DNA of 53,635 bases, taken from Octopus bimaculoides. Lineage: Eukaryota. Of the stretch, positions 1-53,635 are shown piece by piece. The position numbers and the translations under genes were made by a program. A model generated the notes under the pieces. The model did not search any database and had not been told where the DNA came from. It saw only the letters and a list, made by a program, of their open reading frames with translations. Location: contig NC_068982.1 of the NCBI RefSeq assembly GCF_001194135.2, forward strand, positions 180,936,902 through 180,990,536, in the 5' to 3' direction. Numbering within the stretch: position 1 is the stretch's first letter; each line of letters opens with the position of its first letter.

Positions 1-135
1 GTGGTGATAGCAAAGGGACAATTACTTCTAAAGAGAGGGAAGGTGTAAGCAGTATGCATGGACAAGGCTATAAAAGTATTAGAATCTAGAGGTTTCACTG
101 GTCATAGTAGTATCAGGTCATTTTATTACTATCAA
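1..135 (+). repeat. Diverged copy of the sequence forming the inner left arm and spacer of the 37.1-37.9 kb palindrome
   Basis: gggacaattacttctaaagagagggaaggtgtaagcagtatgcatggacaaggctataaaa aligns by eye with gggacaatcacttctaaggaaaaggaaggtgtaagcattatgcatggacaaggctataaaa at ~37414-37474; similarity continues through ctggtca and a T-rich ttact motif. Confidence 0.8.
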
Positions 136-2719: not shown

Positions 2720-3530
2720 CAAAAATAACACGCGCTCTTGTTGGTTTCAGTTTCTTGTCCAGCATTACGCTAGCAACTAAAGACACCTTTGAGAGATAAT
2801 GTTCCAGTACAGGCCCTTTTGTGTCCCCCTAAAGTCGAATAGCATGAATTGTTCAGCGAAAAGTGAGTCTTGTATTACATTTACGCAGGCAATGCTGAGA
2901 GCTTCGACTCCATACTCTACCTTTTAGACTCTCGCTCAAATTAGTGGACCCATCTCTCATCTCCTGTGACTATTCTCTCAAAACGTTCTTCACCTTCGAT
3001 GTCGTAGTGTTTGAGTAAGCGTTGGTATACTTTAGAATCATTGCTTTTATATGCTTCAGTATGTTCTGTTGGCGCCCATCTAACAAAAACTCCGAAAGCG
3101 CAGATAGCCGTAGAAGATTTCCAATACAGAACGAAAACTAATTTGTGTAGAATATACAACCTTATCGATGATTACTCTCCTGATTGCCAGAACCATCACT
3201 TCGTACCTCACAGTTTTCAGGCCATTTTAAAACTTCTTGATCAAGTATATCCACTGTAGACTGCTCCTTCTGTATTGAGCTGAAAGTCTGCAATGAGCTT
3301 TAGTCTCTCACTCATCTTCAGCCTCGCGAAATGGGATCACTGATCTCTGTTTTCATTGCGAAAAACTACAAGCGGAACGGCCATGTTTACTCTGTAACAC
3401 AAGAAAAAAAAAACAAAAACTGAAGTGATGAATCCTTGGTTACATAAGCACAGTAGTACCATCCGTTCATACGCGAGAGCTGAAACCAAATCCTAAATGC
3501 AGTTTTGTCATAAGTGCATATAACTTTTTA
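2720..3530 (-). mobile_element. Tc1/mariner transposase pseudogene fragment
   Basis: Minus strand reads VRWAPTEHTEAYK...YQRLLKHYDIEGEERFERIVTGDERWVH (mariner WVP and RIVTGDETW motifs), then FERESKR*SME and GDTKGPVLEHYLSK. Stops and frameshifts are present; no TIR pair recognised. Confidence 0.85.
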
Positions 3531-3765: not shown

Positions 3766-3820
3766 ATATGTATGTGTGTCTGTGTGTGAGTTTATAGTTA
3801 AAAGAAGGACAGAGAATGGA

Positions 3821-4224
3821 GGTAAAGACATCAACAATTATTTATTATCAAATTGGCCATCTTCGCTTCTTACAGACGTTTCAATTAATACTCAATAATT
3901 TAATTACAATTTTGTATATTAAATTTTCATTTATGTAACATGAACATAATTTCATTACAGACAAAAAAAGATATACTTTGAGATGTTGTATGCGGACCTA
4001 TAAATCGATTTCAGAGTCTGCTGAAATGAACTGAAGAATCTGAAATGAACTGATAGGTCCAGATATTACATCTGAAGGTACATCTTTTTCTCTGATGAAA
4101 TTATGCTCATGTCACAAAAATGAAAATTCAATGTACAAATTTGTAATTAAATTATTGAGTAATAATTGAAACGGGTGTAAGAAGAGAATATGACCAATTT
4201 GGTAAAAATAAATAATTGTTTACC
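3821..4224. mobile_element. Palindromic MITE / fold-back element (~400 bp)
   Basis: Left arm aacaattatttattatcaaattggccatcttcgcttcttacagacgtttcaattaatactcaataatttaattacaa...gagatgt is the approximate reverse complement of acatctgaagg...ttgtaattaaattattgagtaataattgaaacgggtgtaagaagagaatatgaccaatttggtaaaaataaataattgtt. Arms are ~150 bp, with an inner GGACCTAT/ATAGGTCC pair and no ORF. Confidence 0.85.
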
Positions 4225-4681
4225 AGTATTTCGTTGGCTGCAACTGTCCCTTCACGAGGTCAACATACCCTCTAATTAAATTTATATATATANNNNNNNN
4301 NNNNNNNNNNNNNNNNNNNNNNNNNNNNNNNNNNNNNNNNNNNNNNNNNNNNNNNNNNNNNNNNNNNNNNNNNNNNNNNNNNNNNNNNNNNNNNNNNNNN
4401 NNNNNNNNNNNNNNNNNNNNNNNNTATATATAACTGTATGATCCAATACTCGAGGTGTAGTTAGAAACTTAGCATTAAACAATCTGTATTGAATGAAAAA
4501 CAAAAAAAAAAAACAATTTTCGGGAACAATAGTAGTTTATTGAGACGGAAGTTTGCGGATTCCTTTTCATTTACCGAAGAACGATGATCTACAAAACAAG
4601 TTCTTTTTATCTTCCTCGGTAAGCAACTATGGTTGCCGCGTGGGGTAAAAACAATGCAAGAGTTACAGAATGGAGTATGGG

Positions 4682-4780
4682 AAATCCGGGCTACATATGT
4701 TTCATAGCGAGTGCAATCTCAGAAGTTATTTTACCACTTCTGAGGTTCCACTCGCTATGAAGCATATGTAGCCCAGATTT
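4682..4780. repeat. Near-perfect inverted repeat: 45-bp stem, 9-nt loop
   Basis: 4682-4726 versus the reverse complement of 4736-4780 differ at 4 of 45 positions (2 G:U, 2 mismatches on the + strand); loop TATTTTACC. Confidence 0.95.
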
Positions 4781-6582: not shown

Positions 6583-8729
6583 AGTAGCAGCAGCAAAAAT
6601 AACAGCAACAACCAAAACTTGCATCACCTAAAATAAATGTATTTATTGCAATGACACATGTGGGTTAGAACGAAAACTGATTGTGGAAGTTACGTTTATG
6701 AATTTCTTTTCTAAGATTGCTAATGTGAAATAATGTGTTGAAACGGACGGTCATTTTTTTCTTGCCGAATAAACAGACGCACTATATACTCGTTCTTCTC
6801 TACAGCTTTATTATTGTTCTTATTTCATGTCCAGTGTCTCGAAATCTTTCGTCACACACGTGTGACCCATTGAATGACTTTTCATCCCACGTCTGTTATG
6901 TGGCAGGGAAAGTCGCTGAAGAGTGCACACAGTTGAGTGGCGAAAGCGTTCCACACAATGAACATAAAATACGAACAATAAGAAACAAGTGAAAAACTAA
7001 TGTATGGTGCGTCTGTTTCTTTGTCAAAAAAAAAACCCCAAAAAAACGACGATCCCGAAGTATAACGATAATTCCGGAAGTATAATAAAAAAAAAATCGA
7101 AAGCCATTCGATATTTCCTAATCTCGTAGTCGTATAACTTAACTTTAATTCATTTTTTCTTAAATGGAATATCTAGAGATGATTAGACATTTGTAATCAT
7201 AAGCCATTATAATAAAGGTAGTAGCTCATCAGAAACGTTGGTGTGTCAGACAATGTCATATGGTATTTAGTTATGGTTTCTTGAATTTTGAATTCATATG
7301 CATTCAACATGCTTTTCACCCTTTGGAGATCGATAAAGCAAAGTAGTAACCCTTTTCTGACATCAATTTAATAGCCTGAAGCTCTCACTAAGTTTTACTG
7401 TCTTGTCCCTATGTAAGAAGACACCTGTAGCACGAGCTGTCTTTTTTTAATGATACTTTTCCTTATGCAACTTAGAAGAATTCTATCTTCTATATCCGTA
7501 CAGATTTAACACAAAGTTGAAAGTGCTCCTCAACTTTGTCCACAGGCAGATTGTGGTCCTATCTTTAACTAATATTAGGCTTCGCTCAAATAATTTTTAA
7601 GCGGAGTAATTAATAGCATACATTTGTACTAAATAAAAGTTACATGCAAGTCAAGTTCTAAAGTGGATTTCTACACACTACTAATGGGACAGATATATGA
7701 GTATGAGAAAATCTAATTGTAATGGTTCGGATTCAAAGTAAAAGTTACGAACAATCTTACTGTTAAATTAGTTTGAGTCATAATAAAAAAAATATCTAAT
7801 AAAACTTCCTTTAATAGCACAAATATGAAATAGTTGTTCAACTCTTTAATTCTTTGTTTTGACCATTATAGCTACGATTATGCTGGAGCAACAAGGCTGG
7901 GTATGAAGGAAAGTAAGAATTTCAGGATTAATGTGCATAATGACCCTACTATATCGATGGCCCTTAATATACTAAATTATTCACCTTAATAATATTCGAA
8001 AAAATACCGAACAGCGAAATCGAGAAATTGCAAAAATGCATCAGCTATAAACGTATGTATACGAATGAATGTAAGGGTTATAGAGACCTATTATAATATC
8101 ATAGCGAGATTAAAGCTAGGATAATGGCAGAATATTGGACAAACATTAATACATTGTATTGTGGTCTTGAATAATTATTTTTTATTGGATATTGACTTGA
8201 CACGCAGAAAGTCCTAAGTGAAGAATTCTCGGATTTAGGCAATCTGTGTCCAAAAACACCAACAATCATTTCATAGCACCTTCAGTAAGAAATATATCTC
8301 TGAAATGACATTTTCAACCTTAGTTTTCTCATAGGAAATCAGTATCAAGACACAATCTGATTACTTGTTGCGCCAGCCTAGGCTACAAAAAATTATTGTA
8401 TTAAGCACGTGCAAATAGTATTGCTATTAAACAAACATTTAGGTCAGTTGAATTACGTTTCGCAAAATTCTTGAAAGTGAAACTGTAACAGACTGAAAGT
8501 GTTGAATATTAATTTACAAAGTTCATTGTTCCAAGCTAGCTGTAAACAATTAAGAAGAAAATGCAAAAAGTTAAAAACGAATCAGATAAAGCTTGAACAC
8601 AGTTATTAATGAAACACACACACACACGCACACACACAAATATACATACATGTGCATATATATGTATATATATTTATACATATATATATGTATATATATA
8701 CACGCACTTACGCACACGCATACATACAC

Positions 8730-8771
<42 letters not shown>

Positions 8772-9096
8772 NNNNNNNNNNNNNNNNNNNNNNNNNNNNN
8801 NNNNNNNNNNNNNNNNNNNNNNNNNNNNNNNNNNNNNNNNNNNNNNNNNNNNNNNNNNNNNNNNNNNNNNNNNNNNNNNNNNNNNNNNNNNNNNNNNNNN
8901 NNNNNNNNNNNNNNNNNNNNNNNNNNNNNNNNNNNNNNNNNNNNNNNNNNNNNNNNNNNNNNNNNNNNNNNNNNNNNNNNNNNNNNNNNNNNNNNNNNNN
9001 NNNNNNNNNNNNNNNNNNNNNNNNNNNNNNNNNNNNNNNNNNNNNNNNNNNNNNNNNNNNNNNNNNNNNNNNNNNNNNNNNNNNNNNNNNNNNNNN

Positions 9097-9640
9097 ATGT
9101 CTCTCAAATGTTTTGGCAGGGCATTGAAGAGCTGAGGTCCTCTGAAACCGAGGCTGCTGCAGTATCTCGTTCTTATGTGAGATGCAGTGGACGGTACCTT
9201 TGGCACCATGCAGTGGCGACTCGTGCGGGCATTCCTGTAGTACTTGATACCAAAGTTTGGCACCAGTCCTTCCAGTATTTTCCATATGTATATTATTACA
9301 TATCTCTTCCGTCTGCGCTCCAGGGATTAGAGACCTAGTGCCTTCAGTCGCTCCCTGTAGTTCATCTGTTGGACTGTGGCGACCTTTTTTGTATAGTCCC
9401 GCTGAATTGCCTCGAGTTCTGCTGTCTGCTTAACACTAGGCGGCTCAGAACAAATGTCTTCCATAGAATCAACATGACGTTTTGATCCCTTGCCAGTTGT
9501 CTGCACTTTGCTGTCACATTGACAATGTGCATGTGAAATGATGCATCACTACACATGTTGATGCCCAGATCTCTTACTGTTTGTGGTTCTGGGATTGCAG
9601 TACCTCCAGGCCCTGTGTATGCCAGTTGGGAGGTACTTGT
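9097..9640 (-). mobile_element. CR1/L2-group LINE 3' fragment with internal deletions, running into a gap
   Basis: Minus strand reads VRDLGINM, MLILWKTFVLSRL and PNFGIKYYRNARTSRHCMVPKVPS...SLGFRGPQLFNALPKHLRD, the C-terminal RT region of CR1-type ORF2. Confidence 0.9.
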
Positions 9641-10140
9641 GGTCTTGTAGCGCAGTACTTGTAGCACAGTGCTTAGATATATATATATATCTAATAAATA
9701 ATTAAGACTCAGTTGAATTAGGTACTTAAATTCAGAGCACCAACGCAATTCGGTGTAACCCGCGCAGCTCGAAGTTAGGTGAATAAAAAGTATCAGTGTC
9801 CAAGTGTCAGTGCATTACGGCCGTTTCACGCGGTTCTATTTAATCGATCAATGAAAACATTACATCAATTTGAAATAAACCTCTCTCCTCGGAAGCAGAC
9901 GACTATATAGATTACCAACATGAAGGATAAACCATTATTTTTCAGCAAAATTACATCTGTGCAAGAGACTAAAATAATTACGTTGTTTCAATTTGCTATT
10001 TTTGTGGCAGAACGAATTCAGGGAAAAATGTATATCTAAAGCCCAGTACAATTTAGGGTGGCAGTGGAAAATAATGGGGGTCAAGAAAGAGAAATGTTGA
10101 TATAGCCTCATTTGTATGTATGTTTATCACATTCATAATA

Positions 10141-23267: not shown

Positions 23268-23395
23268 ACTGGTACTTATCTCATCACTCCGAAAGGATGA
23301 AAGGCAAAGTTGACCTCGGTGGATTTTGACCTCAGAACGTAAACACAATGCCGCTAAGCATTTGGTCCGTCGTGCTAACGGTTCTCTCAGCTCCC
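23268..23395 (-). mobile_element. SINE head fragment (same family as 30901-31130)
   Basis: ggtactta...ccgaaaggatgaaaggcaaagttgacctcggtggattttgacctcagaacgt...gctaagcattt...gtgctaacg is the reverse complement of the 30901 copy. Confidence 0.75.
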
Positions 23396-23399
23396 CATC

Positions 23400-26299: not shown

Positions 26300-27215
26300 C
26301 GGCTTTTGTTATGGTCGCTTACCAGAGCTGAGCTCACGATAAAAAGAAAAAAAAGACTTTGGCAAACGCTTGTCATTCATTCTAATAACATGTCCAGTCC
26401 ATCTCATTTGAGCTAAGATAACATGTTGAATTGAGCTGCAACGGGCCATGCACATAACTTCTGTATCTGGTATGAAGATTTTCCCACTTGACTCCTAAGA
26501 TGAATCTGAAGCACTTTTGATGAAATCCCTTCATGTGACGCTTGCATGTGGTCCATATCTCATTCGAGTAAAGAAGTTTAGACAATACACGCGCTTTATC
26601 GACTGTGATTTTTTGTCTGCAGGGGAAAAAATCTATCCACCCATACTCGCTTTTCGAGCTTTCCAAATGCAACGCTTCTCATTCGACAGTATATTTCTGC
26701 ATCAAGACTACAATCCCTTGACAGTGTACTTCCTAGTTAAAAAAAGGTCTCAATGACTTCTAACCTTGTTCCATTCGCAAAAATGTTTGGTTCAGAATAT
26801 GTTTGTCCTGGCACGGGAGTAAGCATTACTTTGGTTTTCCCCAAACTAATTGTGAGTCCGAAATATACATATGCAGTGGAAAATCTGTCCATTAAATGTT
26901 ACACATCCCCTCTGAGTGTACCAATAAATCAGCATCAGCAGCATAAAGTAATTCTCTAACAAGTATTTTGAAAGTCTTTGCTTTGCAGTTAAACCTGGTC
27001 AAATTAAATATACAAGATGTCCGAAATCTGACCCCGATTCCCCTGTTGCAACCCTTGAAAGCATACCAAATTAATGCAGCAAGATAAATAGAGAAAAGTG
27101 TAGGTGTAGGAATATTTCCATGTTTGACACCGTTGTCGACCGAAAACTCACGAGATAGCTCACCATTAAAGAGTACCTGAGCTTTCATGTTGAAATTCTT
27201 CAACGTCTATAGGAT
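26300..27215 (-). mobile_element. RTE-BovB-like LINE, 5'-truncated RT pseudogene
   Basis: NGELSREFSVDNGVKHGNIPTPTLFSIY...GIGVRFRTSCIFNLTRFNCKAKT...VRELLYAADADLLVHSE, then LLYSNEIWT...GFHQKCFRFILGVKWE: diagnostic RTE/BovB RT blocks with frameshifts. Confidence 0.95.
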
Positions 27216-30900: not shown

Positions 30901-31130
30901 GGCGAGCTGGCAGAAACGTTAGCACACCGGGCGAAATGCTTAGCCGTATTTCGTCTGCCGCTACGTTCTGAGTTCAAATTCCGCCGAGGTCGACTTTGCC
31001 TTTCATCCTTTCGGGGTCGATTAAATAAGTACCAATTACGCACTGGGGTCGATATAATCGACTTAATCCGTGTTTGTCTGTCCTTGTTTGTCCCCTCTGT
31101 GTGTAGCCCCTTGTGGGTAGTAAAGAAATA
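30901..31130 (+). mobile_element. Apparently full-length, young tRNA-derived SINE
   Basis: A-box-like TGGCAGAAACG (30908-30918), B-box GTTCAAATTCC (30972-30982) and an aagaaata tail. Flanked by identical ACACACATACACAC at 30885-30898 and 31131-31144 (possible TSD, but in microsatellite context). Confidence 0.95.
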
Positions 31131-33354: not shown

Positions 33355-33566
33355 CAGGCACAGAAGTGGCTGTGTGAGAAGAAGCTTGCTTACCAACCAC
33401 ATGTTTCCTGTTTCAGTCACACTGTGTGGCACCTTCTACAATTGTATTCTTATATAGCACCAGGCCGACCAAACCCTTGTGAGTGGATTTGGTAGACGGA
33501 AACTGAAAAGAAGCTCATCGTTTATATATACGTGTGTGTGTGTGTGTGTGTGAGTGGTGTGTGTGT

Positions 33567-33944: not shown

Positions 33945-34281
33945 GTGAAAGACTGTGTGGTGAGAAGCTTGCTTCCCAATCACATGTTTCCGAGTTCAGT
34001 CCCACTGCGAGGTACCTTGGACAAGTGTCTTATACTATACCCTCGGGTCGACCAAAGCCTTGTGAGTGGATTTGGTAGACAGAAACTGAAAGAAGCCCGT
34101 CGTATATATGCATATATATGTATGTGTGTGTGTGTGTATATGTGTATATGTATATATATATNNNNNNNNNNNNNNNNNNNNNNNNNNNNNNNNNNNNNNN
34201 NNNNNNNNNNNNNNNNNNNNNNNNNNNNNNNNNNNNNNNNNNNNNNNNNNNNNNNNNNNNNNNNNNNNNNNNNNNNNNNNN

Positions 34282-34320
<39 letters not shown>

Positions 34321-34550
34321 ATGTATGTATATATGTATTTGTGTGTCTGTGTTTGTCATCGCTTGACAACAGGTATTGCTGTGTTTACGTCCCCGCAACT
34401 TAGCGTTTCTGCAAAAGGAGACCGATAGAATAAGTATTAGGTTTACAAACCAATAAGTCCTGGGGTCGATTTGTTCGACAATAGACGGTGCTCCAGCATG
34501 GCCGCTGTCACATGACTGAAACAAATAAAAGAAAAAATAAAAGAATACAA
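33945..34550 (+). mobile_element. tRNA-derived SINE with internal (AT)/(GT) tract containing an assembly gap
   Basis: Same head, core and tail as 33355-33820; the gap at 34162-34281 lies inside the internal microsatellite. Confidence 0.9.
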
Positions 34551-36109: not shown

Positions 36110-36610
36110 TAGCGATTTAAATCATTAGTTACGAAAACAAATGCAAAATATCATCTAATAACCACAAAAATAATAAGAGTGCAAATCATGGCAGCAGTCG
36201 CAATAAATGTGCATGTCCGCACATAAATAGATGCATGCAAAACAAAATGCACCATCTACAAATGCACAATCACCACATGACTACATAAATATGCATACAT
36301 AGGAGCCTCCAAAAACCAATTCAAGGTCCATTACCGCAATCAGGTCTCCTTATTCCGATAGATAAGCCGGCGACACACGACAAAATAGCGACCTAATATG
36401 GAGATCAAAAGAAAGGAAAATAAAATATGAAATAAAATGGTCAAGAATAAAAGTCGCCCACACGTATAACATATTATCCGGAGTGTTTGACTTGTAACTC
36501 GAAGAAGCCTTGTGTATCCTGTTCAGCAAAAAAAAAAAAAACTAGGTAAGCTATCACAGTGAAAAAAGCCAAGGACGTTGCCACCGATCTAAATATACAT
36601 TTTCCCGATA
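36110..36610 (+). mobile_element. PLE GIY-YIG endonuclease remnant (C-terminal C.LC.EE subtype)
   Basis: Across frameshifts: KCACPHINRC / CKTKCTIYKCTITT*LHKYAYIGASKNQFKVHYRN / WRSKERKIKYEIKWSRIKVAHTYNILSGVFDL*LEEALCIL / GRCHRSKYTF. Confidence 0.8.
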
Positions 36611-36617
36611 ATGCACA

Positions 36618-36840
<223 letters not shown>

Positions 36841-37101
36841 AATTCGGTGAACTCCCTCCAGCCCCTTCCTCTCCATACATTCCTCTAAAAACAGACGAAT
36901 AACATAACAACCACGCAGACATCATGTGTGAGCATTGATGCATTTACAATTACACGTAGGTTCATACGCGTATGTATGTATATATATATAGAAGGTTTAG
37001 ATTTAGATTCAAGATTGAATATGGTACTTATGTTTAGGCACCAGAATATAGTATGGCATGGTATTATCCAAAAACCATTCCAAAATACCAGGTGATCAAA
37101 A

Positions 37102-37945
37102 AATCAAAATGAGCAACACGGATTTCAAAGATGATTGCACCACGCCCGTTTCATGTTACTCCATTTATTTAAGTAATGCGAGCATTACATTAAATGCAAT
37201 ATGTAGAGCAATCTTCAGCTGCACGAAAATGCAGAAAATTACAGTAGAATAGACATATTATAATTGTGGCAACATTTCAAATCCAAGTGGGAGGGAGAAT
37301 ACATAAAAATTCGTCTTGACATAGCCAAGTCTATCAGGCTAGTAATTGGTTCTAGGCAAAAATTCCAAACTGTCTCTGATTTTATTGTCTCTTATCTAGT
37401 AGTAATAGTATGAGGGACAATCACTTCTAAGGAAAAGGAAGGTGTAAGCATTATGCATGGACAAGGCTATAAAATATATGGTTATAAAGGATTCTCTGGT
37501 CAGAGTGGCAACACTCTTATAGGTTAGGTTTTTTTTTTTACTACTGACCAGAGAATCCTTTATAACCATATCTTTTATAGCATTGTCCATGCATAATGTT
37601 TACACCTTCCCTTTCCTTAGAAGTGATTGTCCCTCATACTATTACTACTAGATAAGAGACAATAAAATCAGAGACAGTTTGGAATTTTTGCCTAGAACCA
37701 ATTACTAGCCTGATAGACTTGGCTATGTCAAGATGAATGTTTATGTATTCTCCCTCCCACTTGGATTTGAAATGTTACCACAATTATAATATGCCTATTC
37801 TACTGTAATTTTCTGCATTTTCCTGCAGCTGAAGATTGCTCTACATATTGCATTTAATGTAACGCTTGCATTACTTAAATAAATGGAGTAGCATGAAACG
37901 TGCGTACTGCAATCATCTTTGAAATCCGTGTTGCTTATTTTGATT
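37102..37945. repeat. Long fold-back palindrome: 402-bp arms, 40-bp spacer
   Basis: 37102-37503 versus the reverse complement of 37544-37945, compared base by base: 16 substitutions and no indels (~96% identity). Confidence 0.98.
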
Positions 37946-38512
37946 ATATATATATATATATATAAAGTTTACAAAGCTCATTGAGGGATAGCAATATCCT
38001 ATGAAAGTACTGGCTAGTTATAGTTACCTATACAAAGAATGTTAATACTCAACTGCAAGGTAATTCTAAAACCGTGCTATATATTTATTTATTTATTATA
38101 ATGAGATAAGAAAATAGAGAGTTAATTAATAAGTTATTTATTAATTAAAAAGTTGACAAACATCTCTTACAACTCTTTCAATTCAAGAACTTCAGATAAT
38201 TAATAAACAAGATTAAATGCTATTTGAAAGACGAATCTCGTCAGAGGTAATTTAAGATTATACAAAAAGAGTATTTAATTCCTGCATGTTGAGTAAACGG
38301 CTGCAAACCGTTATCATTTTAAGATCTATGGAGGATAGCTGTTGTACTATCCTACTTTTTATTTTTTTACGTTTAGTTCCGGCTTTTCATTTTCCGTTTT
38401 TCGTTTTCCGTTGTTTACTGTCTGCCTCTTTTATATGCTGCCTTCTCCGTTTTTTTTTTGTTCCTGTTTCTTCTATCATTCAATCTCTTTAGTTCGTCAT
38501 GATATGTGATTT

Positions 38513-38565
38513 GCGCCTGAAGGATATGTTTGAGGTTTCTTAACATATGAAACTATTAGTAGGGC
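38513..38565 (+). ncRNA. Putative type I hammerhead ribozyme, slightly degenerate, probably from a PLE pseudo-LTR
   Basis: GCGC-CUGAAGG-AUAUGUU[11 nt]AACAUAU-GAAAC-UAUUA-GUA-GGGC: perfect 7-bp stem II, GAAAC, short stem III, GUA cleavage triplet. A9 is G and stem I has one G-G mismatch. Pyrimidine-rich tract upstream, AATAAA downstream. Confidence 0.5.
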
Positions 38566-39039
38566 TTAATTCATGTATTGTGACCTGTAAATAAACATTT
38601 ATCTCTCACCAGATGGAGTACTTTGAATTTTATATCACGGAGCAGTACATTATATACATGTGTATGTGCGTGTGTGCATGTGTGTTTAATGTGTGTGCAT
38701 GTGTGTGTAATTTTTCGGAGGTAAGTAGGATTCAGTTCAGTAATAATTACATAGTAAACTCGGTCGTGGGAGAGAGGTATTGTGGAGAATTTTTCGTTGA
38801 TTAAATTTGGAGTCAGACTTTTGCTCAGAATTTTTTCATGCGTGTAGAAATTTGTAAACATGTGTGTCTGCTTATCTGAATAAGCTTCAAGTATATTACG
38901 GATGATTTTTGGTCAGCTTAGATCATTACTTTTCGTTATTTCTGTTTTTATCGCATTTAATCCTTTGCTTTGACAATATATAAACATATATTCACATACA
39001 TATTCATTTAGATATATGTATATTTACATACACACACAC

Positions 39040-41419: not shown

Positions 41420-41730
41420 GGCCTAGGCGTGGTTGCTTGGTAAGACACTTGCATTCCAATCGCATGTTGTCGGTTCAGTTCCACATCGTAGTACCTTGTG
41501 CAAGTGTCTTCTATTATAACATCGGGCCAACCAAAGCCTTGTGAGTGGATTTGGTAGACGGAAACACAAGTCCATCGTATGACGAGGGAAACTTAGCGGT
41601 TCGCCAAAATAGACCGATAGCATAAGTATCAGTGTTAAAAATTCCTTGGGGCGATTTATTCGACTCAAACCTTTCAAGGGCTGTGCTCCACCACGGTGGG
41701 AGTCAATGAATGAAACAAATAATAGATAAA
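41420..41730 (+). mobile_element. tRNA-derived SINE lacking the internal microsatellite
   Basis: Core ccaaagccttgtgagtggatttggtagacggaaac joins almost directly to aacttagcggttcgccaaaatagaccgatag; tail aatgaatgaaacaaataa. Confidence 0.8.
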
Positions 41731-42249: not shown

Positions 42250-43500
42250 TCAGGGTACAGGACGTTAGAACAATGAACTACAGACAACGGAACGAACACA
42301 TAGGAAAACGGAAAGCCACTTGCAATAATTTATAGAAAAAACAAAAGACGGAGACATACTCTCTTCATCAGTAGGGAATAAGATGAAATATTCAGTGAGA
42401 GAATGAATAAAAGAAAATAAAAAAAAACGCGTGGAGTTCAACGGTCCAACATGGTGGTGATATGGAAAAAAGAGGTTGAAAGGAAAGGAGATAATAAAAA
42501 GTGGTTCCATGAAAGTGTGATAATAATAGAGCTAGTGATCACAACAACAAAAGGTGAGCCTGCGGATGTGTGTATGTGAGAATGGTGTATGTGAGTGTGT
42601 ATGTATGAACAGGGGCGATTCCCTTTGATGTATGTGAGTGAGAGCATGTGTGACATGTGTGTGTGTTTGTGTATGTTGTGTGTAGCAGTGTATGTGTGCT
42701 TTGTTAAATGCTGTATGCACGTGTAAGTATGTGTGTCTGTGACCAAGCAGCGTGCATGTGTATGTTGTATGTATGTGAATGAAAGCTACCTTTATCTATG
42801 TATTTAGATTGTGTTAATGCGTGCTGCGTGTGTATGTATATATTGTTAGGTATTACGTACGTGTGTGGGTTCGGGAGTGTACATGATGGTGTGAGGCGTG
42901 TCTACTGTGTTAAACACTGTGTGTGGATGTTCATATAGCGGTATGTGTGGTGGCGATATTGAAAATGGTGTGTGGTGTAGGTGCTGAGACGTGGTCAGTG
43001 CTACTGTGTGTGGAGTGATGCGGGGTTGGTGTCAAATGAACAGAGGAGGCAAAGTTGGTGTCAGATGCCGAAAGGAGGTGAGCTGAGCCCATGTCACACA
43101 AAGGAGTGAAGAGAGAAGATTAATTCCTGGTCACGGCGAAGGCGGGATTCCGAGTGGTCCCTGTGCAAAAATAGTCTGAGCACTGACAGATGGAGCAGCA
43201 AATGGCCGGTAGAGCGGAAATAGCACGAGACCTGGGTGTCATTGCCGAGTTTGATGTCTCGGAGTTGTACCGCGAACCGTTCAGCCAAGCGATGATCTGT
43301 TTGACAGATGTACGAGTAAGGACAGATAGAGTAAGAGATGCGGTAAATGACATTACTAGAAGTGCAGGTAAAGGAGTCGGTGATGTGATGGGGATGATGG
43401 TGTGTGCCTGTGAGGTAGGTGGTGTTGGAGAGATTGCGGTAAGTGCGTCAGCATGGGCGGATTGAACCGTGACCTGGGAACCTGGAGTTCTTCTCTAATC
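42250..43500 (-). mobile_element. PLE 3' portion: GIY-YIG endonuclease, low-complexity 3' region and pLTR-like end with hammerhead relic
   Basis: Minus frame reads NTTYLTGTHHHPHHITDSFTCTSSNVIYRISYSICPYSYICQTDHRLAERFAVQLRDIKLGNDTQVSCYFRSTGH...RLRRDQELIFSLHSF (Neptune-like VIY/YIG spacing); CUGAUGA core at 42371-42365. Confidence 0.85.
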
Positions 43501-43506
43501 TAAGAA

Positions 43507-43738
43507 TGTTAGCCTGGTTCTCTCTTAACAGCAATTATTTTAAAAATCTTCCATATGTCACTGGTGTTTTTGTAAGGTCAGGCTGTTGGAATTTTTGGCC
43601 ATGTTGTGAAAAGACGATAAATTGTTGTGAAAAGACGATAATTTTACACTATTCCCACTCTGTCAGTAACATTCAATTCTTATTGCAGTTCTCCATGACC
43701 AGGAACCCATATAGCATTCCTGTCACCTCTTTCTCTTA
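43507..43738. repeat. ~200-230 bp direct repeat of 44520-44720
   Basis: Both copies carry tcttccatatgtc.actggtgttttt...tttttggcc.tgttgtga.aagacgataa...tattcccactctgtcagtaacattcaattcttattgcag.tctccatg.ccaggaacccatatagcatt.ctgtcac; this copy has an extra 21-bp tandem duplication. Confidence 0.9.
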
Positions 43739-44029: not shown

Positions 44030-44720
44030 GCATTCGTCCCTAATTACTGCTTATTTACTCTCATCTTCAGCATTGTGGAGGTAATTATATCTTCAGGTTT
44101 TCAGTCAATAAACTTTTTAAGTAACTCTTTCAAGTATTGTCCCTACCACAGGAGTTGCGTCCACTAATACCTCATTCATATCATCTCCATTTCCCTTTCT
44201 ATCGTACAAATGTAATCTCCAGCATAATTGTTTTCTCTTACAATAAACAAAGGGCAGCTCTATAATTCAATAACACTGTTATATTTGAATGAAATGATCT
44301 ACTTGCATCCACTAAAAATTATAGAACTTCCACCCCTCTTTCAATTGATTATTTTTGCTGATATATCACTTTATTTGAAATGGCAATCATAACTAAATTT
44401 GACATATATCTATACTTTATTTCTTAAGATTAATTTACTTTTCTTTTATTTTTCTCATTTTATTCTTTTTCTCTGTAGACAAAACTCTTGTCTTCTTTGT
44501 TATTTTCAAATTATTCTTTGTTCCGTGTTCTCTTAACAACACACTTATTTTTAGAGTCTTCCATATGTCTACTGGTGTTTTCTCTGAGGACAGTGAATCG
44601 CAGTTTTTGGCCTTGTTGTGAGAAGACGATAAGTTTACCGTATTCCCACTCTGTCAGTAACATTCAATTCTTATTGCAGCTCTCCATGGCCAGGAACCCA
44701 TATAGCATTTCTGTCACTCC
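44030..44720 (-). mobile_element. Possible R4/Dong-like LINE 3' remnant (RLE region)
   Basis: Weak motifs across frameshifts: IAIS (cf. ID.AIP), VVGTI (cf. PVVVGALGTI), gcagtaattagggacg...gcgcat (cf. AVILGTAHIL). Confidence 0.35.
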
Positions 44721-46604: not shown

Positions 46605-47420
46605 AAACAGCCATACTCTGTTTTTTCATGGAACCGCTCACGGCATCCAATAATATCATTGATCTGGGTGTGATTATTCATAAAAATCTCAATTGGAGTG
46701 CTCACATCAACAATAAGACCGATATAACTCATAGGATGAGCTCCTGAATCTTAAGAACCTTCCGGTCCAGAGAATAAGGTGTCATCATTCCACTTTTCTC
46801 CTCCTTTGTACGGCCACACCTCGAATACTGCTGCCTCTTGTGGTCTCCCTATACAAAACATAACATCTCGAGGATTGAATCACCTCAGAGAGCACTCACT
46901 AAACGAATTGAAGGCATGACTGATCTCGATTACTGAGACCGCCTTAAAGCCTTGAAGCTCTACTCTTTCCAGCACCGCCGCGAGTCGTACATCATGTGTA
47001 CGATGTGGAGAATATACCACCAGCATTACCCAAACGACCTGAACATTAGTTTCAAGATTCATCCAAGAATGGAACCACAGATCATACGTCCCCTACCCTA
47101 CTCAGGATCACAACATATAGGTACACTGCGGCATAATTTCTTTTCCTCAACAGGCCCTGCCCTGTTTAACATTGTCCCAAAACAGATAAAAGAGGAAAAT
47201 GATTCTGTCAGCTTTAAACGGAGTCTGGACAGATTTCTTCAAGGAATACCTGATAAGCCACCCATACCTGGATACAACTCTCTCAACAAGAACTCACTAC
47301 TTGTATGGACCATAAACAAAACTTGACTTAAAAAGGATTTAGATAATCCTATCAGGTGGTGCTATTAAGTTAGACATGACCTGGACCAATCTTTGGTCGA
47401 AACATATCTAAGTTTATATA

Positions 47421-49684: not shown

Positions 49685-50110
49685 TAATATCGGTTTCAAA
49701 TTTTGACACAAGGCCAGCAATTTCGAGTGAAGCCATGAGTCAATTACATCCACCCCAGTCATTGACTGGTACTTATTTTATCGACCCCGAAAGAATCAAA
49801 GTTAACTTCGTCCCCGGTGTACTAACGATTCTGACAGTTCAAATTCTTAATTGACAATAATGATACCAAAAAAAATAATTACAACATGAATGTTGCTTTC
49901 AAATTCTGGCACAAGACCAATAACTTCTGGGGAGCGAGTAAGATGGCTGCATCGACGTGCAATGCTCTACTGGTATTCTTTCGTCGAACCCGAAAAGATG
50001 AGAGACAAAGTCAACCTCGGCGGCGGAATTTGAATTCACAATGTAAAGAATGATGATATGGTACTAAGCAATTTGCCCTGAGTGCTAACGATTCTACCAG
50101 TTCGCCGCAC
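49685..50110 (-). mobile_element. Two adjacent diverged SINE copies (30901 family), ~49685-49840 and ~49885-50110
   Basis: Both contain tttcaaatt.tg.cacaag.cca, ctggta.t..ttt..tcga.ccc.gaaa and .ctaacgattct; the second retains cggaatttgaattc (B-box). Confidence 0.75.
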
Positions 50111-50764: not shown

Positions 50765-50975
50765 TACGGCGGATAACTGGCACAGCTGTTACCGCAACAG
50801 AAAGGTGTTCAGCAGCATTTCTTCCGACCTTAGGATCTGTGTTTAAATGCCGCCACCGACGACTTTGCCTTTCAGGTTTTGTGATGGATAAAATAAGTAC
50901 CATTTGAGAGCTGAGATCGATGTAAAGGACTTAGAGTCTCCGACAAAATTACTGGCCTTGAGACAAAATTAGAGA
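50765..50975 (+). mobile_element. Diverged SINE (30901 family)
   Basis: gactttgcctttca...ataaaataagtacca...tcgatgtaa...gact...aaattactggccttg matches the family body and tail. Confidence 0.7.
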
Positions 50976-52010
50976 TGAATATTGTTAATGATAGTTGTTG
51001 TAATAGTTATAGTAAGGGTGGTATTAGCACGTATAGTAGTACATCTTAAATAAATAAGCAAACAATACACACATAGACGAACACAGACAACACACGTATT
51101 CATATGCGTGAGCTTCTTTCCTCTTTGTTGTAAATGATATTGCACATATATAGTACCACCAATGAAACTTCTACCATCTGTGAGAACTGTACTCCGATAA
51201 ATTATTTTGTGTTAATGCAAATCAATTTTGTTTCCACCGTTTAAAAAATTAATTTTTATGCAGCTTGATAAACAGTTACTGTCACTATGACATGACTGCT
51301 TCCTGGAAATTCTAGTCTACACACCATCATGGCGACTTTACAAAAGTTTCACATAGTTCCACACAAAAGAAAAATTTATTTATGAAATATTGACGTACAC
51401 TGAATTGCACACACGTCCATAAACAATTACACAAACATATATGTATGTATGTATGTATGCATGTATGCATATATGTATATATACATCTATATATATATAT
51501 TCATATATACACACACAGACATATATATATATATACATATATATATGTATGTAAATTTATGTGTATCCTTATCTTTATCTGTATATATTTATACATATGC
51601 GCATATGTATGTGTATACATACACACACACACACACACACACACATGTATATATATATATATATATATATGCATGTATATATATATATATATATATANNN
51701 NNNNNNNNNNNNNNNNNNNNNNNNNNNNNNNNNNNNNNNNNNNNNNNNNNNNNNNNNNNNNNNNNNNNNNNNNNNNNNNNNNNNNNNNNNNNNNNNNNNN
51801 NNNNNNNNNNNNNNNNNNNNNNNNNNNNNNNNNNNNNNNNNNNNNNNNNNNNNNNNNNNNNNNNNNNNNNNNNNNNNNNNNNNNNNNNNNNNNNNNNNNN
51901 NNNNNNNNNNNNNNNNNNNNNNNNNNNNNNNNNNNNNNNNNNNNNNNNNNNNNNNNNNNNNNNNNNNNNNNNNNNNNNNNNNNNNNNNNNNNNNNNNNNN
52001 NNNNNNNNNN

Positions 52011-53489: not shown

Positions 53490-53635
53490 CTCTTTTACTC
53501 TTTTACTTGTTTCAGTCATTTGACTGCGGCCATGCTGGAGCACCGCCTTTAGTCGAGCAAATCGACCCCAGAACTTATTCTTTGGAAGTCTAGTAGTTAT
53601 TCTATCGGTCTCTTTTGCCGAACCGCTAAGTTACG
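53490..53635 (-). mobile_element. Young SINE 3' end, cut by the window edge
   Basis: cttgtttcagtcatttgactgcggccatgctggagcaccgcctttagtcgagcaaatcgacccca...ctatcggtctcttttgccgaaccgctaagttacg is the reverse complement of the tail at 34390-34530. Confidence 0.92.

What the first reader, a model, noticed from the sequence alone, without database searches (positions are those of the whole stretch)
37102..37945. 844-bp fold-back palindrome with 402-bp arms at ~96% identity
Seen: the arms differ by 16 substitutions with no indels, include a perfect run of roughly 130 bp, and are separated by only 40 bp. The right arm stops at a (TA)n tract while the left flank has no mirror. Established: long closely spaced inverted repeats extrude cruciforms and are usually unstable, and coleoid cephalopods have extensive ADAR editing of dsRNA. 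Inference: if transcribed (possibly intronic), it forms a ~400-bp dsRNA rod that could be an editing substrate or endo-siRNA source. The arm divergence argues against a simple read fold-back artefact and suggests long persistence. The arm may derive from an old CR1/L2 RT fragment (KSIRLVIGSRQK at ~37327-37362 resembles KT..M.IGSRQKL; weak).
Basis: partly seen in the sequence, partly recalled or inferred. Interest (0 to 1): 0.72.

Follow-up and report, generated by a model that had tools for sequence, protein, structure and literature searches.

The report
Inverted pair of a dispersed repeat
The 844-bp palindrome is real, but it is two copies of an ordinary non-coding interspersed repeat lying tail-to-tail in an octopus-like genome, a common kind of structure there that would fold into double-stranded RNA only if it happens to be transcribed.

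Summary
The arms are 37102-37503 and 37544-37945, 402 nt each, with 16 substitutions, no indels and a 40-nt spacer. The longest perfect run is 122 nt, not about 130.

The arms are not a self-contained unit. They belong to a dispersed, non-coding repeat with two other copies in the window, at 1-117 and 9701-9877. The old copy at 9.7 kb aligns collinearly across the left arm boundary. So the left copy is about 515 nt (37001-37516), the right copy is a truncated inverted copy, and the "arm" is only the part they share.

Neither other copy has an inverted partner, so this is not a fold-back transposon family. The arm differences are enriched at CpG sites, which indicates real genomic decay rather than a read artefact.

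All three visible outer ends lie within 11 nt of a (TA)n tract, and a weak target-site-like repeat brackets the whole unit. I read it as a retroposition-type inverted pair formed at one (TA)n-associated site, in one complex event or two.

No RT, SINE head or Rfam family is present. The RNA fold is about -674 kcal/mol, but transcription, editing and small RNAs could not be tested. Near-perfect inverted repeats are already documented as abundant in octopus. Interest is low.

The parts
36979..36990 (.). (TA)6 tract 10 nt upstream of the left copy's outer end
   Evidence: It is one of 35 (TA)>=5 tracts in the window.
36987..37000 (+). TATAGAAGGTTTAG, a possible upstream target-site-duplication copy
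   Evidence: (D3). Its partner is at 37959-37972 with 3 mismatches. I estimate a local chance of about 0.002-0.005. The match was noticed post hoc and is unproven.
37001..37101 (+). Part of the left repeat copy that lies outside the palindrome (no counterpart on the right)
   Evidence: It aligns collinearly with 9701-9800 of the old copy. Local alignment scores 28 against shuffles of 14.1 +/- 1.9, maximum 19. nhmmer with 37001-37520 gives one hit at 9707-9873, E = 4e-5. Its reverse complement is absent from the right flank.
37102..37503 (+). Left arm (the shared part of the left copy)
37504..37516 (+). Diverged end of the left copy (AGTGGCAACACTC), still family-like
   Evidence: It aligns to the solo copy's TAGTAGTATCA.
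37517..37528 (.). Central filler TATAGGTTAGGT, which loosely resembles the flanking TSD-like motif
   Evidence: Read directly from the sequence. The resemblance is weak and inferred.
37529..37543 (-). End of the right copy on the minus strand: ..GGTCAG TAGT + A11 (T11 on the plus strand)
   Evidence: GTAGTA matches the solo copy's tail. The A-run is present in only one of three copies.
37544..37945 (-). Right arm, a truncated inverted copy of the repeat
   Evidence: family-profile positions 87-500.
37945..37964 (.). (TA)10 tract directly abutting the truncated outer end of the right copy
37959..37972 (+). TATATAAAGTTTAC, a possible downstream target-site-duplication copy
   Evidence: (D3).
1..117 (+). 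Solo copy of the repeat's inner 115 nt (80-85% identity), cut by the window start, with no inverted partner downstream
   Evidence: The partner test is (score 9.5-17 against a shuffle maximum of about 20).
9701..9877 (+). Old, diverged copy of the repeat's outer 200 nt. It starts 11 nt after a (TA)6 tract and has no inverted partner

Best explanation
The palindrome is two copies of one dispersed, non-coding interspersed repeat of at least about 515 bp, sitting in opposite orientation with their common 'inner' terminus facing a 40-nt centre. The left copy (37001 to about 37516, plus strand) is the longer one. The right copy (about 37529-37945, minus strand) lacks the outer 100 nt and ends directly in (TA)10. 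The 402-bp 'arm' is simply the part the two copies share.

Shown: the family exists elsewhere as non-palindromic copies. It extends beyond the left arm. Its outer terminus is associated with (TA)n. It has no ORF, no terminal inverted repeats of its own and no tRNA/5S/7SL head.

Inferred: the element is a non-autonomous retroposon, based on one truncated copy, variable tails and one A-run. I infer that both copies were laid down by reverse-transcription-type insertion at a single (TA)n-associated target site. This could have been one complex insertion or a re-insertion soon after, and the copies then diverged by about 4% through ordinary mutation, including CpG decay.

It has no dedicated function. 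Its effect is passive. If a transcript runs through it, the RNA folds into a nearly perfect duplex of about 400 bp, the kind of substrate that ADAR hyper-edits (documented genome-wide in octopus) or that Dicer could cut. At the DNA level, the 40-nt spacer and the 16 mismatches damp cruciform or hairpin fragility.
For: Geometry. Other family copies: solo copy 1-117 at 80-85% identity; old copy 9701-9877 at nhmmer E = 4e-5. That old copy gives one collinear alignment, 37001-37201 against 9701-9877, crossing the inverted-repeat boundary, with score 28 against a shuffle maximum of 19. Neither other copy has an inverted partner, and the 100-nt extension has no mirror on the right. Each copy keeps its own family-like tail beyond the inverted repeat: GAGTGGCA on the left and GTAGTA+A11 on the right, against TAGTAGTA in the solo copy. 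A simple DNA snap-back of one arm would not give this. All three observable outer ends lie 0-11 nt from a (TA)>=5 tract, with a chance of about 3% per end from 35 tracts / 814 bp in 49.6 kb. A TSD-like 14-mer brackets the whole unit. CpG-biased arm differences indicate real in-genome decay. There is no coding capacity, Pfam hit or protein homologue, no tRNA or Rfam family and no terminal inverted repeat within a single copy. dsRNA potential. Literature: in octopus, 4.4e-3 of random loci lie in long near-perfect dsRNA-forming repeats, and hyper-editing is concentrated at neighbouring inverted repeats (PMC5625713).
Against: Only four copies, two of them the arms, could be examined, because no cephalopod DNA was reachable. 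The retroposon assignment is indirect: there is no link to any RT-encoding element, and the A-run occurs in one copy only. The orientation of the family (which end is 3') is not established. The arms are much closer to each other (96%) than to the other copies (84% and about 65%). That fits a coupled origin but would also fit a DNA-level duplication. The TSD-like pair differs at 3 of 14 positions, more than the 4% arm divergence predicts. Transcription is unknown, and no gene was identified in the window.
Confidence: 0.7

Rival explanations
1. DNA-level inverted duplication. A single inserted copy suffered a break or a replication template switch just past its end. The 3' strand folded back on a short microhomology and copied the element backwards, and the product was re-joined at the (TA)n tract. 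The arms were identical at birth and have since diverged by 4%.
For: The arms are each other's closest relatives by far: 96% against 84% and about 65% to the other copies. The spacer is short at 40 nt. No separate TSDs for the right copy were found. Only one TSD-like pair surrounds the unit. There are fewer mismatches near the centre, 4 in the inner 190 nt against 12 in the outer 212 nt (p = 0.08), and the 122-nt perfect run has p = 0.045. This is compatible with arm-to-arm conversion.
Against: The inner boundary of the inverted repeat coincides, within about 10 nt, with a natural terminus of the family as seen in the solo copy. Under this model that would be a coincidence. The right copy carries its own family-like tail (GTAGTA), which the left copy has in a different form.
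Confidence: 0.12
2. Fold-back or MITE-type DNA transposon. The whole 844 bp is one mobile element with 402-bp terminal inverted repeats and a 40-bp loop.
For: It has a palindromic architecture. The window holds two other, unrelated fold-backs at 3833-4220 and 4682-4780. A palindromic Harbinger repeat explains heavy editing in frog (PMC5625713).
Against: Family homology runs 100 nt past the left 'TIR' end. The two other copies have no inverted partner. No TSD directly flanks the inverted-repeat ends: the left flank is ...GATCAAAA and the right is ATATATAT....
Confidence: 0.04
3. Assembly artefact. A short-read assembler joined two paralogous copies from different loci, or mis-resolved a repeat, creating a palindrome that does not exist in the genome.
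For: The scaffold is a gap-rich draft with 12 N runs in 53.6 kb. Complex inverted TE insertions are known to trouble short-read assemblies (PMC8557442). No reads or second assembly could be consulted.
Against: There is no gap inside the structure. The unique 40-nt centre offers only a T11 run as a possible false overlap, which is shorter than any usual k-mer. The arms differ at 16 sites with a natural CpG-decay signature. A TSD-like motif and (TA)n occur on both outer sides, as expected if both flanks come from one site.
Confidence: 0.06
4. A selected hairpin-RNA gene (hpRNA, endo-siRNA or miRNA-like locus) maintained for its dsRNA product.
For: The predicted rod is very stable. The centre matches plant miRNA-precursor models in Rfam, but only below threshold: 55 bits against a 140-bit gathering score, and similar for the others.
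Against: The Rfam matches are generic hairpin matches far below threshold. The arms are copies of a dispersed repeat. The 16 arm differences are not compensated, and nothing indicates conservation. No expression data are available.
Confidence: 0.03

Closest known systems
Closely spaced inverted SINE pairs (for example inverted Alu pairs in primates), the main ADAR hyper-editing substrates
   Same: Two copies of one interspersed repeat sit in opposite orientation close together. They are non-coding and would form a long intramolecular dsRNA if co-transcribed. Neighbouring inverted repeats are documented as the main source of hyper-edited dsRNA across Metazoa, and octopus is at the high extreme (PMC5625713).
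   Different: No Pol III/tRNA-type head was found. The arms are longer (402 nt) and closer in sequence (96%) and in space (40 nt) than is typical of inverted Alu pairs. By my recollection of Lobachev et al. 2000 (cited in PMC10164571), such close pairs are depleted in the human genome. The two copies here look coupled in origin rather than independent.
Complex tandem/inverted insertions of Penelope-like elements (Naiad and Neptune clades)
   Same: Craig et al. 2021 (PMC8557442) describe a preference for (TA)n microsatellite targets, heavy 5' truncation, an inverted 5'-truncated copy immediately adjacent to the main copy, a 30-40-bp extra 'tail', TSDs that are hard to discern, and Naiad families present in Octopus spp. 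The locus shows (TA)n at both outer sides, a long copy plus an inverted truncated copy, and a 40-nt junction.
   Different: There is no sequence link between the arm family and any PLE in the window, no RT or GIY-YIG coding, and no hammerhead ribozyme. The described PLE arrangement puts the inverted copy at the 5' end, head-to-head. Here the shared terminus at the centre looks like the invariant (3'-type) end. This is a resemblance in architecture only.
Fold-back inverted duplications formed by DNA repair or replication (PMC3907307, listed; not read in detail)
   Same: An inverted duplication with a short single-copy spacer.
   Different: Those are large, kb-to-Mb events with breakpoints at arbitrary positions. 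Here the centre coincides with a terminus of a mobile-element family, and each arm has its own element tail.

Membership tests
Inverted pair of interspersed-repeat copies | Each arm is a copy of a repeat family that also occurs elsewhere as single copies | tested here: met
   The solo copy is at 1-117 (80-85% identity) and the old copy at 9701-9877 (E = 4e-5). Neither has an inverted partner.
Inverted pair of interspersed-repeat copies | The two copies are independent insertions, each with its own target-site duplication | tested here: inconclusive
   No convincing TSD was found for either copy alone. One TSD-like pair surrounds the whole unit, and a weak third copy of the motif lies at the centre.
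Fold-back / MITE DNA transposon | The inverted repeats are the element's termini and are directly flanked by a TSD | tested here: not met
   Family homology continues 100 nt beyond the left arm. The flanks ...GATCAAAA and ATATATAT... do not match.
Fold-back / MITE DNA transposon | Family members are palindromic as a rule | tested here: not met
   Two of two other copies lack an inverted partner. The sample is very small.
SINE (tRNA-, 5S- or 7SL-derived) | A Pol III-type head related to tRNA, 5S or 7SL | tested here: not met
   ARAGORN finds no tRNA in the window. Rfam gives no tRNA, 5S or 7SL match at E <= 1 in 36400-38600.
   All six frames carry many stops. There is no Pfam family at E <= 1 apart from one meaningless 14-bit hit. 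Two protein searches found no homologue.
Penelope-like element complex insertion | Insertion at (TA)n microsatellites | tested here: met
   Three of three observable outer ends lie within 0-11 nt of a (TA)>=5 tract, with a chance of about 3% per end.
Penelope-like element complex insertion | An inverted 5'-truncated copy adjacent to the main copy | tested here: inconclusive
   A truncated inverted copy is adjacent. However, the family's orientation is unknown, and the junction appears to be at the invariant end rather than the 5' end.
Penelope-like element complex insertion | The element encodes, or shares its 3' end with, a PLE (RT + GIY-YIG); a hammerhead ribozyme sits in the pLTR of canonical clades | tested here: not met
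   There is no coding capacity. There is no similarity to the GIY-YIG-like remnant region at about 43 kb or anywhere else in the window. No hammerhead was found in Rfam. Comparison with autonomous octopus PLE consensus sequences was not possible.
miRNA / hpRNA gene | A match to a curated RNA family, or small-RNA evidence | tested here: not met
   The only hits are sub-threshold generic hairpin matches, best 55.5 bits against a gathering score of 140. Small-RNA data are not available.
Read or assembly fold-back artefact | Identical arms and no support from spanning reads | tested here: not met
   The arms differ at 16 sites with a CpG bias. Read support is not testable with these tools.

The most novel reading that the evidence does not exclude
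The long copy and the inverted truncated copy were made in one insertion event by a (TA)n-targeting retroelement machinery of the Penelope-like type, acting on a non-autonomous element. If so, such one-step inverted dimers would be a systematic source of the near-perfect hairpin loci that give octopus its exceptionally high dsRNA and hyper-editing load.
Probability: 0.25. Interest if true: 0.5.

Novelty: new member of a known kind. Interest (0 to 1): 0.22.

Why it matters
As a single locus it matters little. It is one more transposon-derived inverted repeat in a genome already known to be full of them, and nothing shows that it is transcribed.

Its modest value is as a clean example. The anatomy can be read base by base: a long copy, a truncated inverted copy, (TA)n on both sides and a 40-nt junction. 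If the same architecture recurs genome-wide for this family, it would point to an insertion mechanism that manufactures dsRNA-forming hairpins. That would help explain why octopus tops the metazoan ranking for hyper-editing substrates.

Tried and rejected
Searches that found nothing or could not be completed:
- Six-frame translation of one arm against 5.8 billion proteins: no hit. The candidate list reached 8000, possibly a cap.
- The 66-aa ORF crossing the left boundary: no candidate at all.
- Look-ups for contigs encoding the two 64-aa ORFs across the palindrome and for the O. bimaculoides hit P0001: not on record. No independent assembly, other species or other genomic copies could therefore be examined.
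- Pfam on all six arm frames and on 12 window ORFs that looked TE-like: no hits. One attempt to scan the whole contig by DNA reference failed because of stop codons.
- Rfam at gathering threshold on the window and at E-value threshold on the locus: only generic hairpin noise.
- Further family fragments sought with a four-sequence profile: none.

Ideas considered and rejected:
- Helitron: no 5'-TC or CTRR-3' ends, and the AGAGTG-GCAA-CACTCT mini-hairpin is in the left copy only.
- L1-type twin priming: it gives non-overlapping inverted segments with the tails outside.
- cDNA snap-back at the RNA 5' end: it would put a random truncation point at the centre, yet the solo copy shares that terminus.
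- An A-to-G editing footprint between the arms: 4 G/A against 3 A/G, so no direction.
- Terminal inverted repeats within the single 515-nt copy: none.

Full report
**Observation**

- The arms are 37102-37503 and 37544-37945, 402 nt each and 96% complementary, with 40 nt between them.
- A base-by-base comparison gives 16 substitutions (10 transitions, 6 transversions) and no indels.
- The longest perfect run is 122 nt (37314-37435), and complementarity stops abruptly at both outer ends.
- As RNA, the region folds into a single rod of -673.6 kcal/mol, against -190.6 +/- 7.2 for shuffles, z = -67.
- The window is a draft eukaryotic scaffold with 32% G+C and 12 runs of N. The palindrome lies inside one uninterrupted 4.8-kb contig.
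- A LINE-tail ORF at 46952-47326 is 64% identical to an Octopus bimaculoides protein.

**What the arms are**

The arms have no coding capacity. All six frames are broken by stops. Pfam finds nothing meaningful, and two searches of the 5.8-billion-protein collection find no relative. The suggested CR1/L2 RT origin is therefore unsupported.

There is no tRNA gene and no Rfam family at gathering threshold. At a permissive threshold the centre matches only plant miRNA-precursor models far below their cut-offs, which are generic hairpin hits.

The arms are, however, copies of a dispersed repeat.
- Solo copy: the inner 115 nt recur at window 1-117 (plus strand, 80-85% identity, cut by the window edge).
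- Old copy: a much older relative lies at 9701-9877 (nhmmer E = 4e-5).

**The key anatomical result**

The old copy aligns in one collinear stretch with 37001-37201, straight across the left arm boundary at 37102. The local alignment scores 28, against 14.1 +/- 1.9 (maximum 19) for shuffles. A single nhmmer hit covers positions 7-198 of a 37001-37520 query.

- The repeat family therefore extends about 100 nt to the left of the left arm.
- The reverse complement of that 100 nt is absent from the right flank.
- So the left copy is about 515 nt (37001 to about 37516), and the right copy is a truncated inverted copy.
- The equal 402-nt 'arms' are only the part the two copies share. They are not a unit with matched ends.
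- At the centre, the solo copy shows that the family ends about 10 nt beyond the inverted repeat.
- Both copies carry their own diverged versions of that tail: left GAGTGGCA, right (minus strand) GTAGTA followed by A11, against solo TAGTAGTA.
- Neither the solo copy nor the old copy has an inverted partner nearby.
- A single copy has no terminal inverted repeats.
- No TSD directly flanks the inverted repeat.

A fold-back or MITE transposon family is thus effectively excluded on this small sample.

**Authenticity**

Four of the 16 arm differences fall on CpG positions, against 0.56 expected (p = 0.0013). This is the signature of methyl-CpG decay in a genome, not of sequencing or chimera error. 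The A/G differences show no direction, so there is no editing-like footprint.

The unique centre offers only a T11 run as a possible false overlap, and there is no gap inside the structure. I put an assembly artefact at about 6%. It cannot be excluded without reads.

**Origin**

Three observations bear on how the pair arose.

1. The outer end of every copy that can be seen lies next to a (TA)n tract: 10 nt away for the left copy, 0 nt for the truncated right copy and 11 nt for the old copy. The window has 35 such tracts covering 814 bp of 49.6 kb, so the chance per end is about 3%.
2. A 14-mer, TATAGAAGGTTTAG, ends exactly where the left copy begins (36987-37000). It recurs with three mismatches just after the right-hand (TA)10 (37959-37972). 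Such matches are at background frequency window-wide (7 found, 8 expected), so I estimate a local chance of a few per thousand. The match was noticed post hoc, and three differences are more than 4% divergence predicts. A looser version, TATAGGTTAGG, sits at the centre.
3. The arms are far more alike (96%) than either is to the other copies (84% and about 65%).

Taken together, I read the locus as two reverse-transcription-type insertions of the same element at one (TA)n-associated site, made in one complex event or in quick succession. About 4% mutational divergence followed. The retroposon assignment itself is an inference from one truncated copy, variable tails and the absence of TIRs.

A DNA-level fold-back duplication remains possible (about 12%). 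It explains the sister-like arms. It also fits the weak excess of identity near the centre: the 122-nt perfect run has p = 0.045, and the inner-versus-outer mismatch difference has p = 0.08. But it makes two things coincidences: the placement of the centre at a family terminus, and the independent family-like tail of the right copy.

**Comparison with what is known**

In function, the closest analogue is the inverted Alu pair. Porath et al. (PMC5625713) show that hyper-editing across Metazoa is concentrated in long near-perfect dsRNA formed by neighbouring inverted repeats. They also show that O. bimaculoides has an exceptionally high fraction (4.4e-3) of loci in such structures. One 844-bp example in a 53-kb window is therefore not surprising. 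The window contains two more, unrelated fold-backs at 3833-4220 and 4682-4780.

In architecture, the closest analogue is the complex insertion of Penelope-like elements described by Craig et al. (PMC8557442). They report (TA)n targets, heavy 5' truncation, an adjacent inverted truncated copy, a 30-40-bp tail, and Naiad families in Octopus. Membership is not shown, for three reasons:
- There is no sequence link to a PLE.
- There is no ribozyme.
- The junction seems to be at the wrong end.

At the DNA level, yeast data summarised in PMC10164571 bear on fragility. Lengthening the spacer from 12 to 20 bp cuts Alu inverted-repeat recombination about 40-fold, and 94% identity cuts rearrangements about 15-fold.

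**What could not be done**

No cephalopod DNA, reads, RNA-seq or small-RNA data were reachable with these tools. Copy number, dimer frequency, the orthologous locus, transcription and editing all remain untested. No gene was recognised in the window, so 'intronic' is unverified.

**Verdict**

This is a real, TE-derived inverted repeat of a kind already known to be abundant in octopus, with no evidence of a dedicated function. Interest is low. The only lead worth a genome-wide follow-up is whether this family regularly forms such dimers at (TA)n sites in a single insertion event.

Noticed in passing
window 3833-4220: A second fold-back: 388 nt self-complementary at about 81%, with arms of about 134-190 nt. 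Its sequence is unrelated to the 37-kb palindrome. A (TA)n tract and an assembly gap lie about 70 nt to its right.
   Followed up: partly
window 4682-4780: A 99-nt hairpin, 85% self-complementary. Both this hairpin and the 3833-4220 fold-back are preceded within 20 nt by the 9-mer AGAATGGAG (3813-3821 and 4667-4675). This may be chance or part of a larger repeat unit.
   Followed up: partly
window 30901-31063, 23270-23396, 49738-49801, 50806-50874: Copies, in both orientations, of a short repeat containing GTTCAAAT.CCGCCGAGGTCGACTTTGCCTTTCA. It looks like a tRNA-derived SINE core, but this is recognised from memory and was not tested. A second family occurs as direct repeats at 33370-33551, 33953-34137 and 41432-41570.
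   Followed up: no
window 43097-43447 (-), 43622-43726 and 44613-44717: An ORF with a GIY-YIG/CCHH-looking motif (VIYRISYSICPYSYICQTDHRLAERF) suggests a Penelope-like endonuclease remnant, but Pfam was negative. A 105-nt direct repeat (93% identity) 991 bp apart lies next to it. The surrounding 42-46 kb shows strong G/C skew.
   Followed up: partly
window 26312-27206 (-), about 8571-9640 (-), 46937-47323 (+): Degenerate LINE remnants, recognised by RT-downstream and C-terminal motifs. Only the last was searched, and it is 64% identical to O. bimaculoides XP_014784343.1. None reaches a Pfam threshold.
   Followed up: partly
window 2944-3171 (-): An ORF ending ...ERIVTGDERWVH that looks like a mariner/Tc1 transposase fragment. 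Pfam was negative.
   Followed up: no
window 36554-36845: A long compound microsatellite, (TAA)n with interspersed TGA units running into (GAA)n, lies 250 bp upstream of the palindrome locus.
   Followed up: no
whole window, N runs (4293-4424 ... 51698-52010): Many of the 12 assembly gaps are bordered by (TA)n, (CA)n or similar microsatellites. This suggests the short-read assembly tends to break at microsatellites. There are 35 (TA)>=5 tracts in 49.6 kb.
   Followed up: partly
window 34397-34532 vs 53499-53632: A 136-nt inverted repeat pair, 87% identical and 19 kb apart. This is another dispersed repeat family.
   Followed up: no
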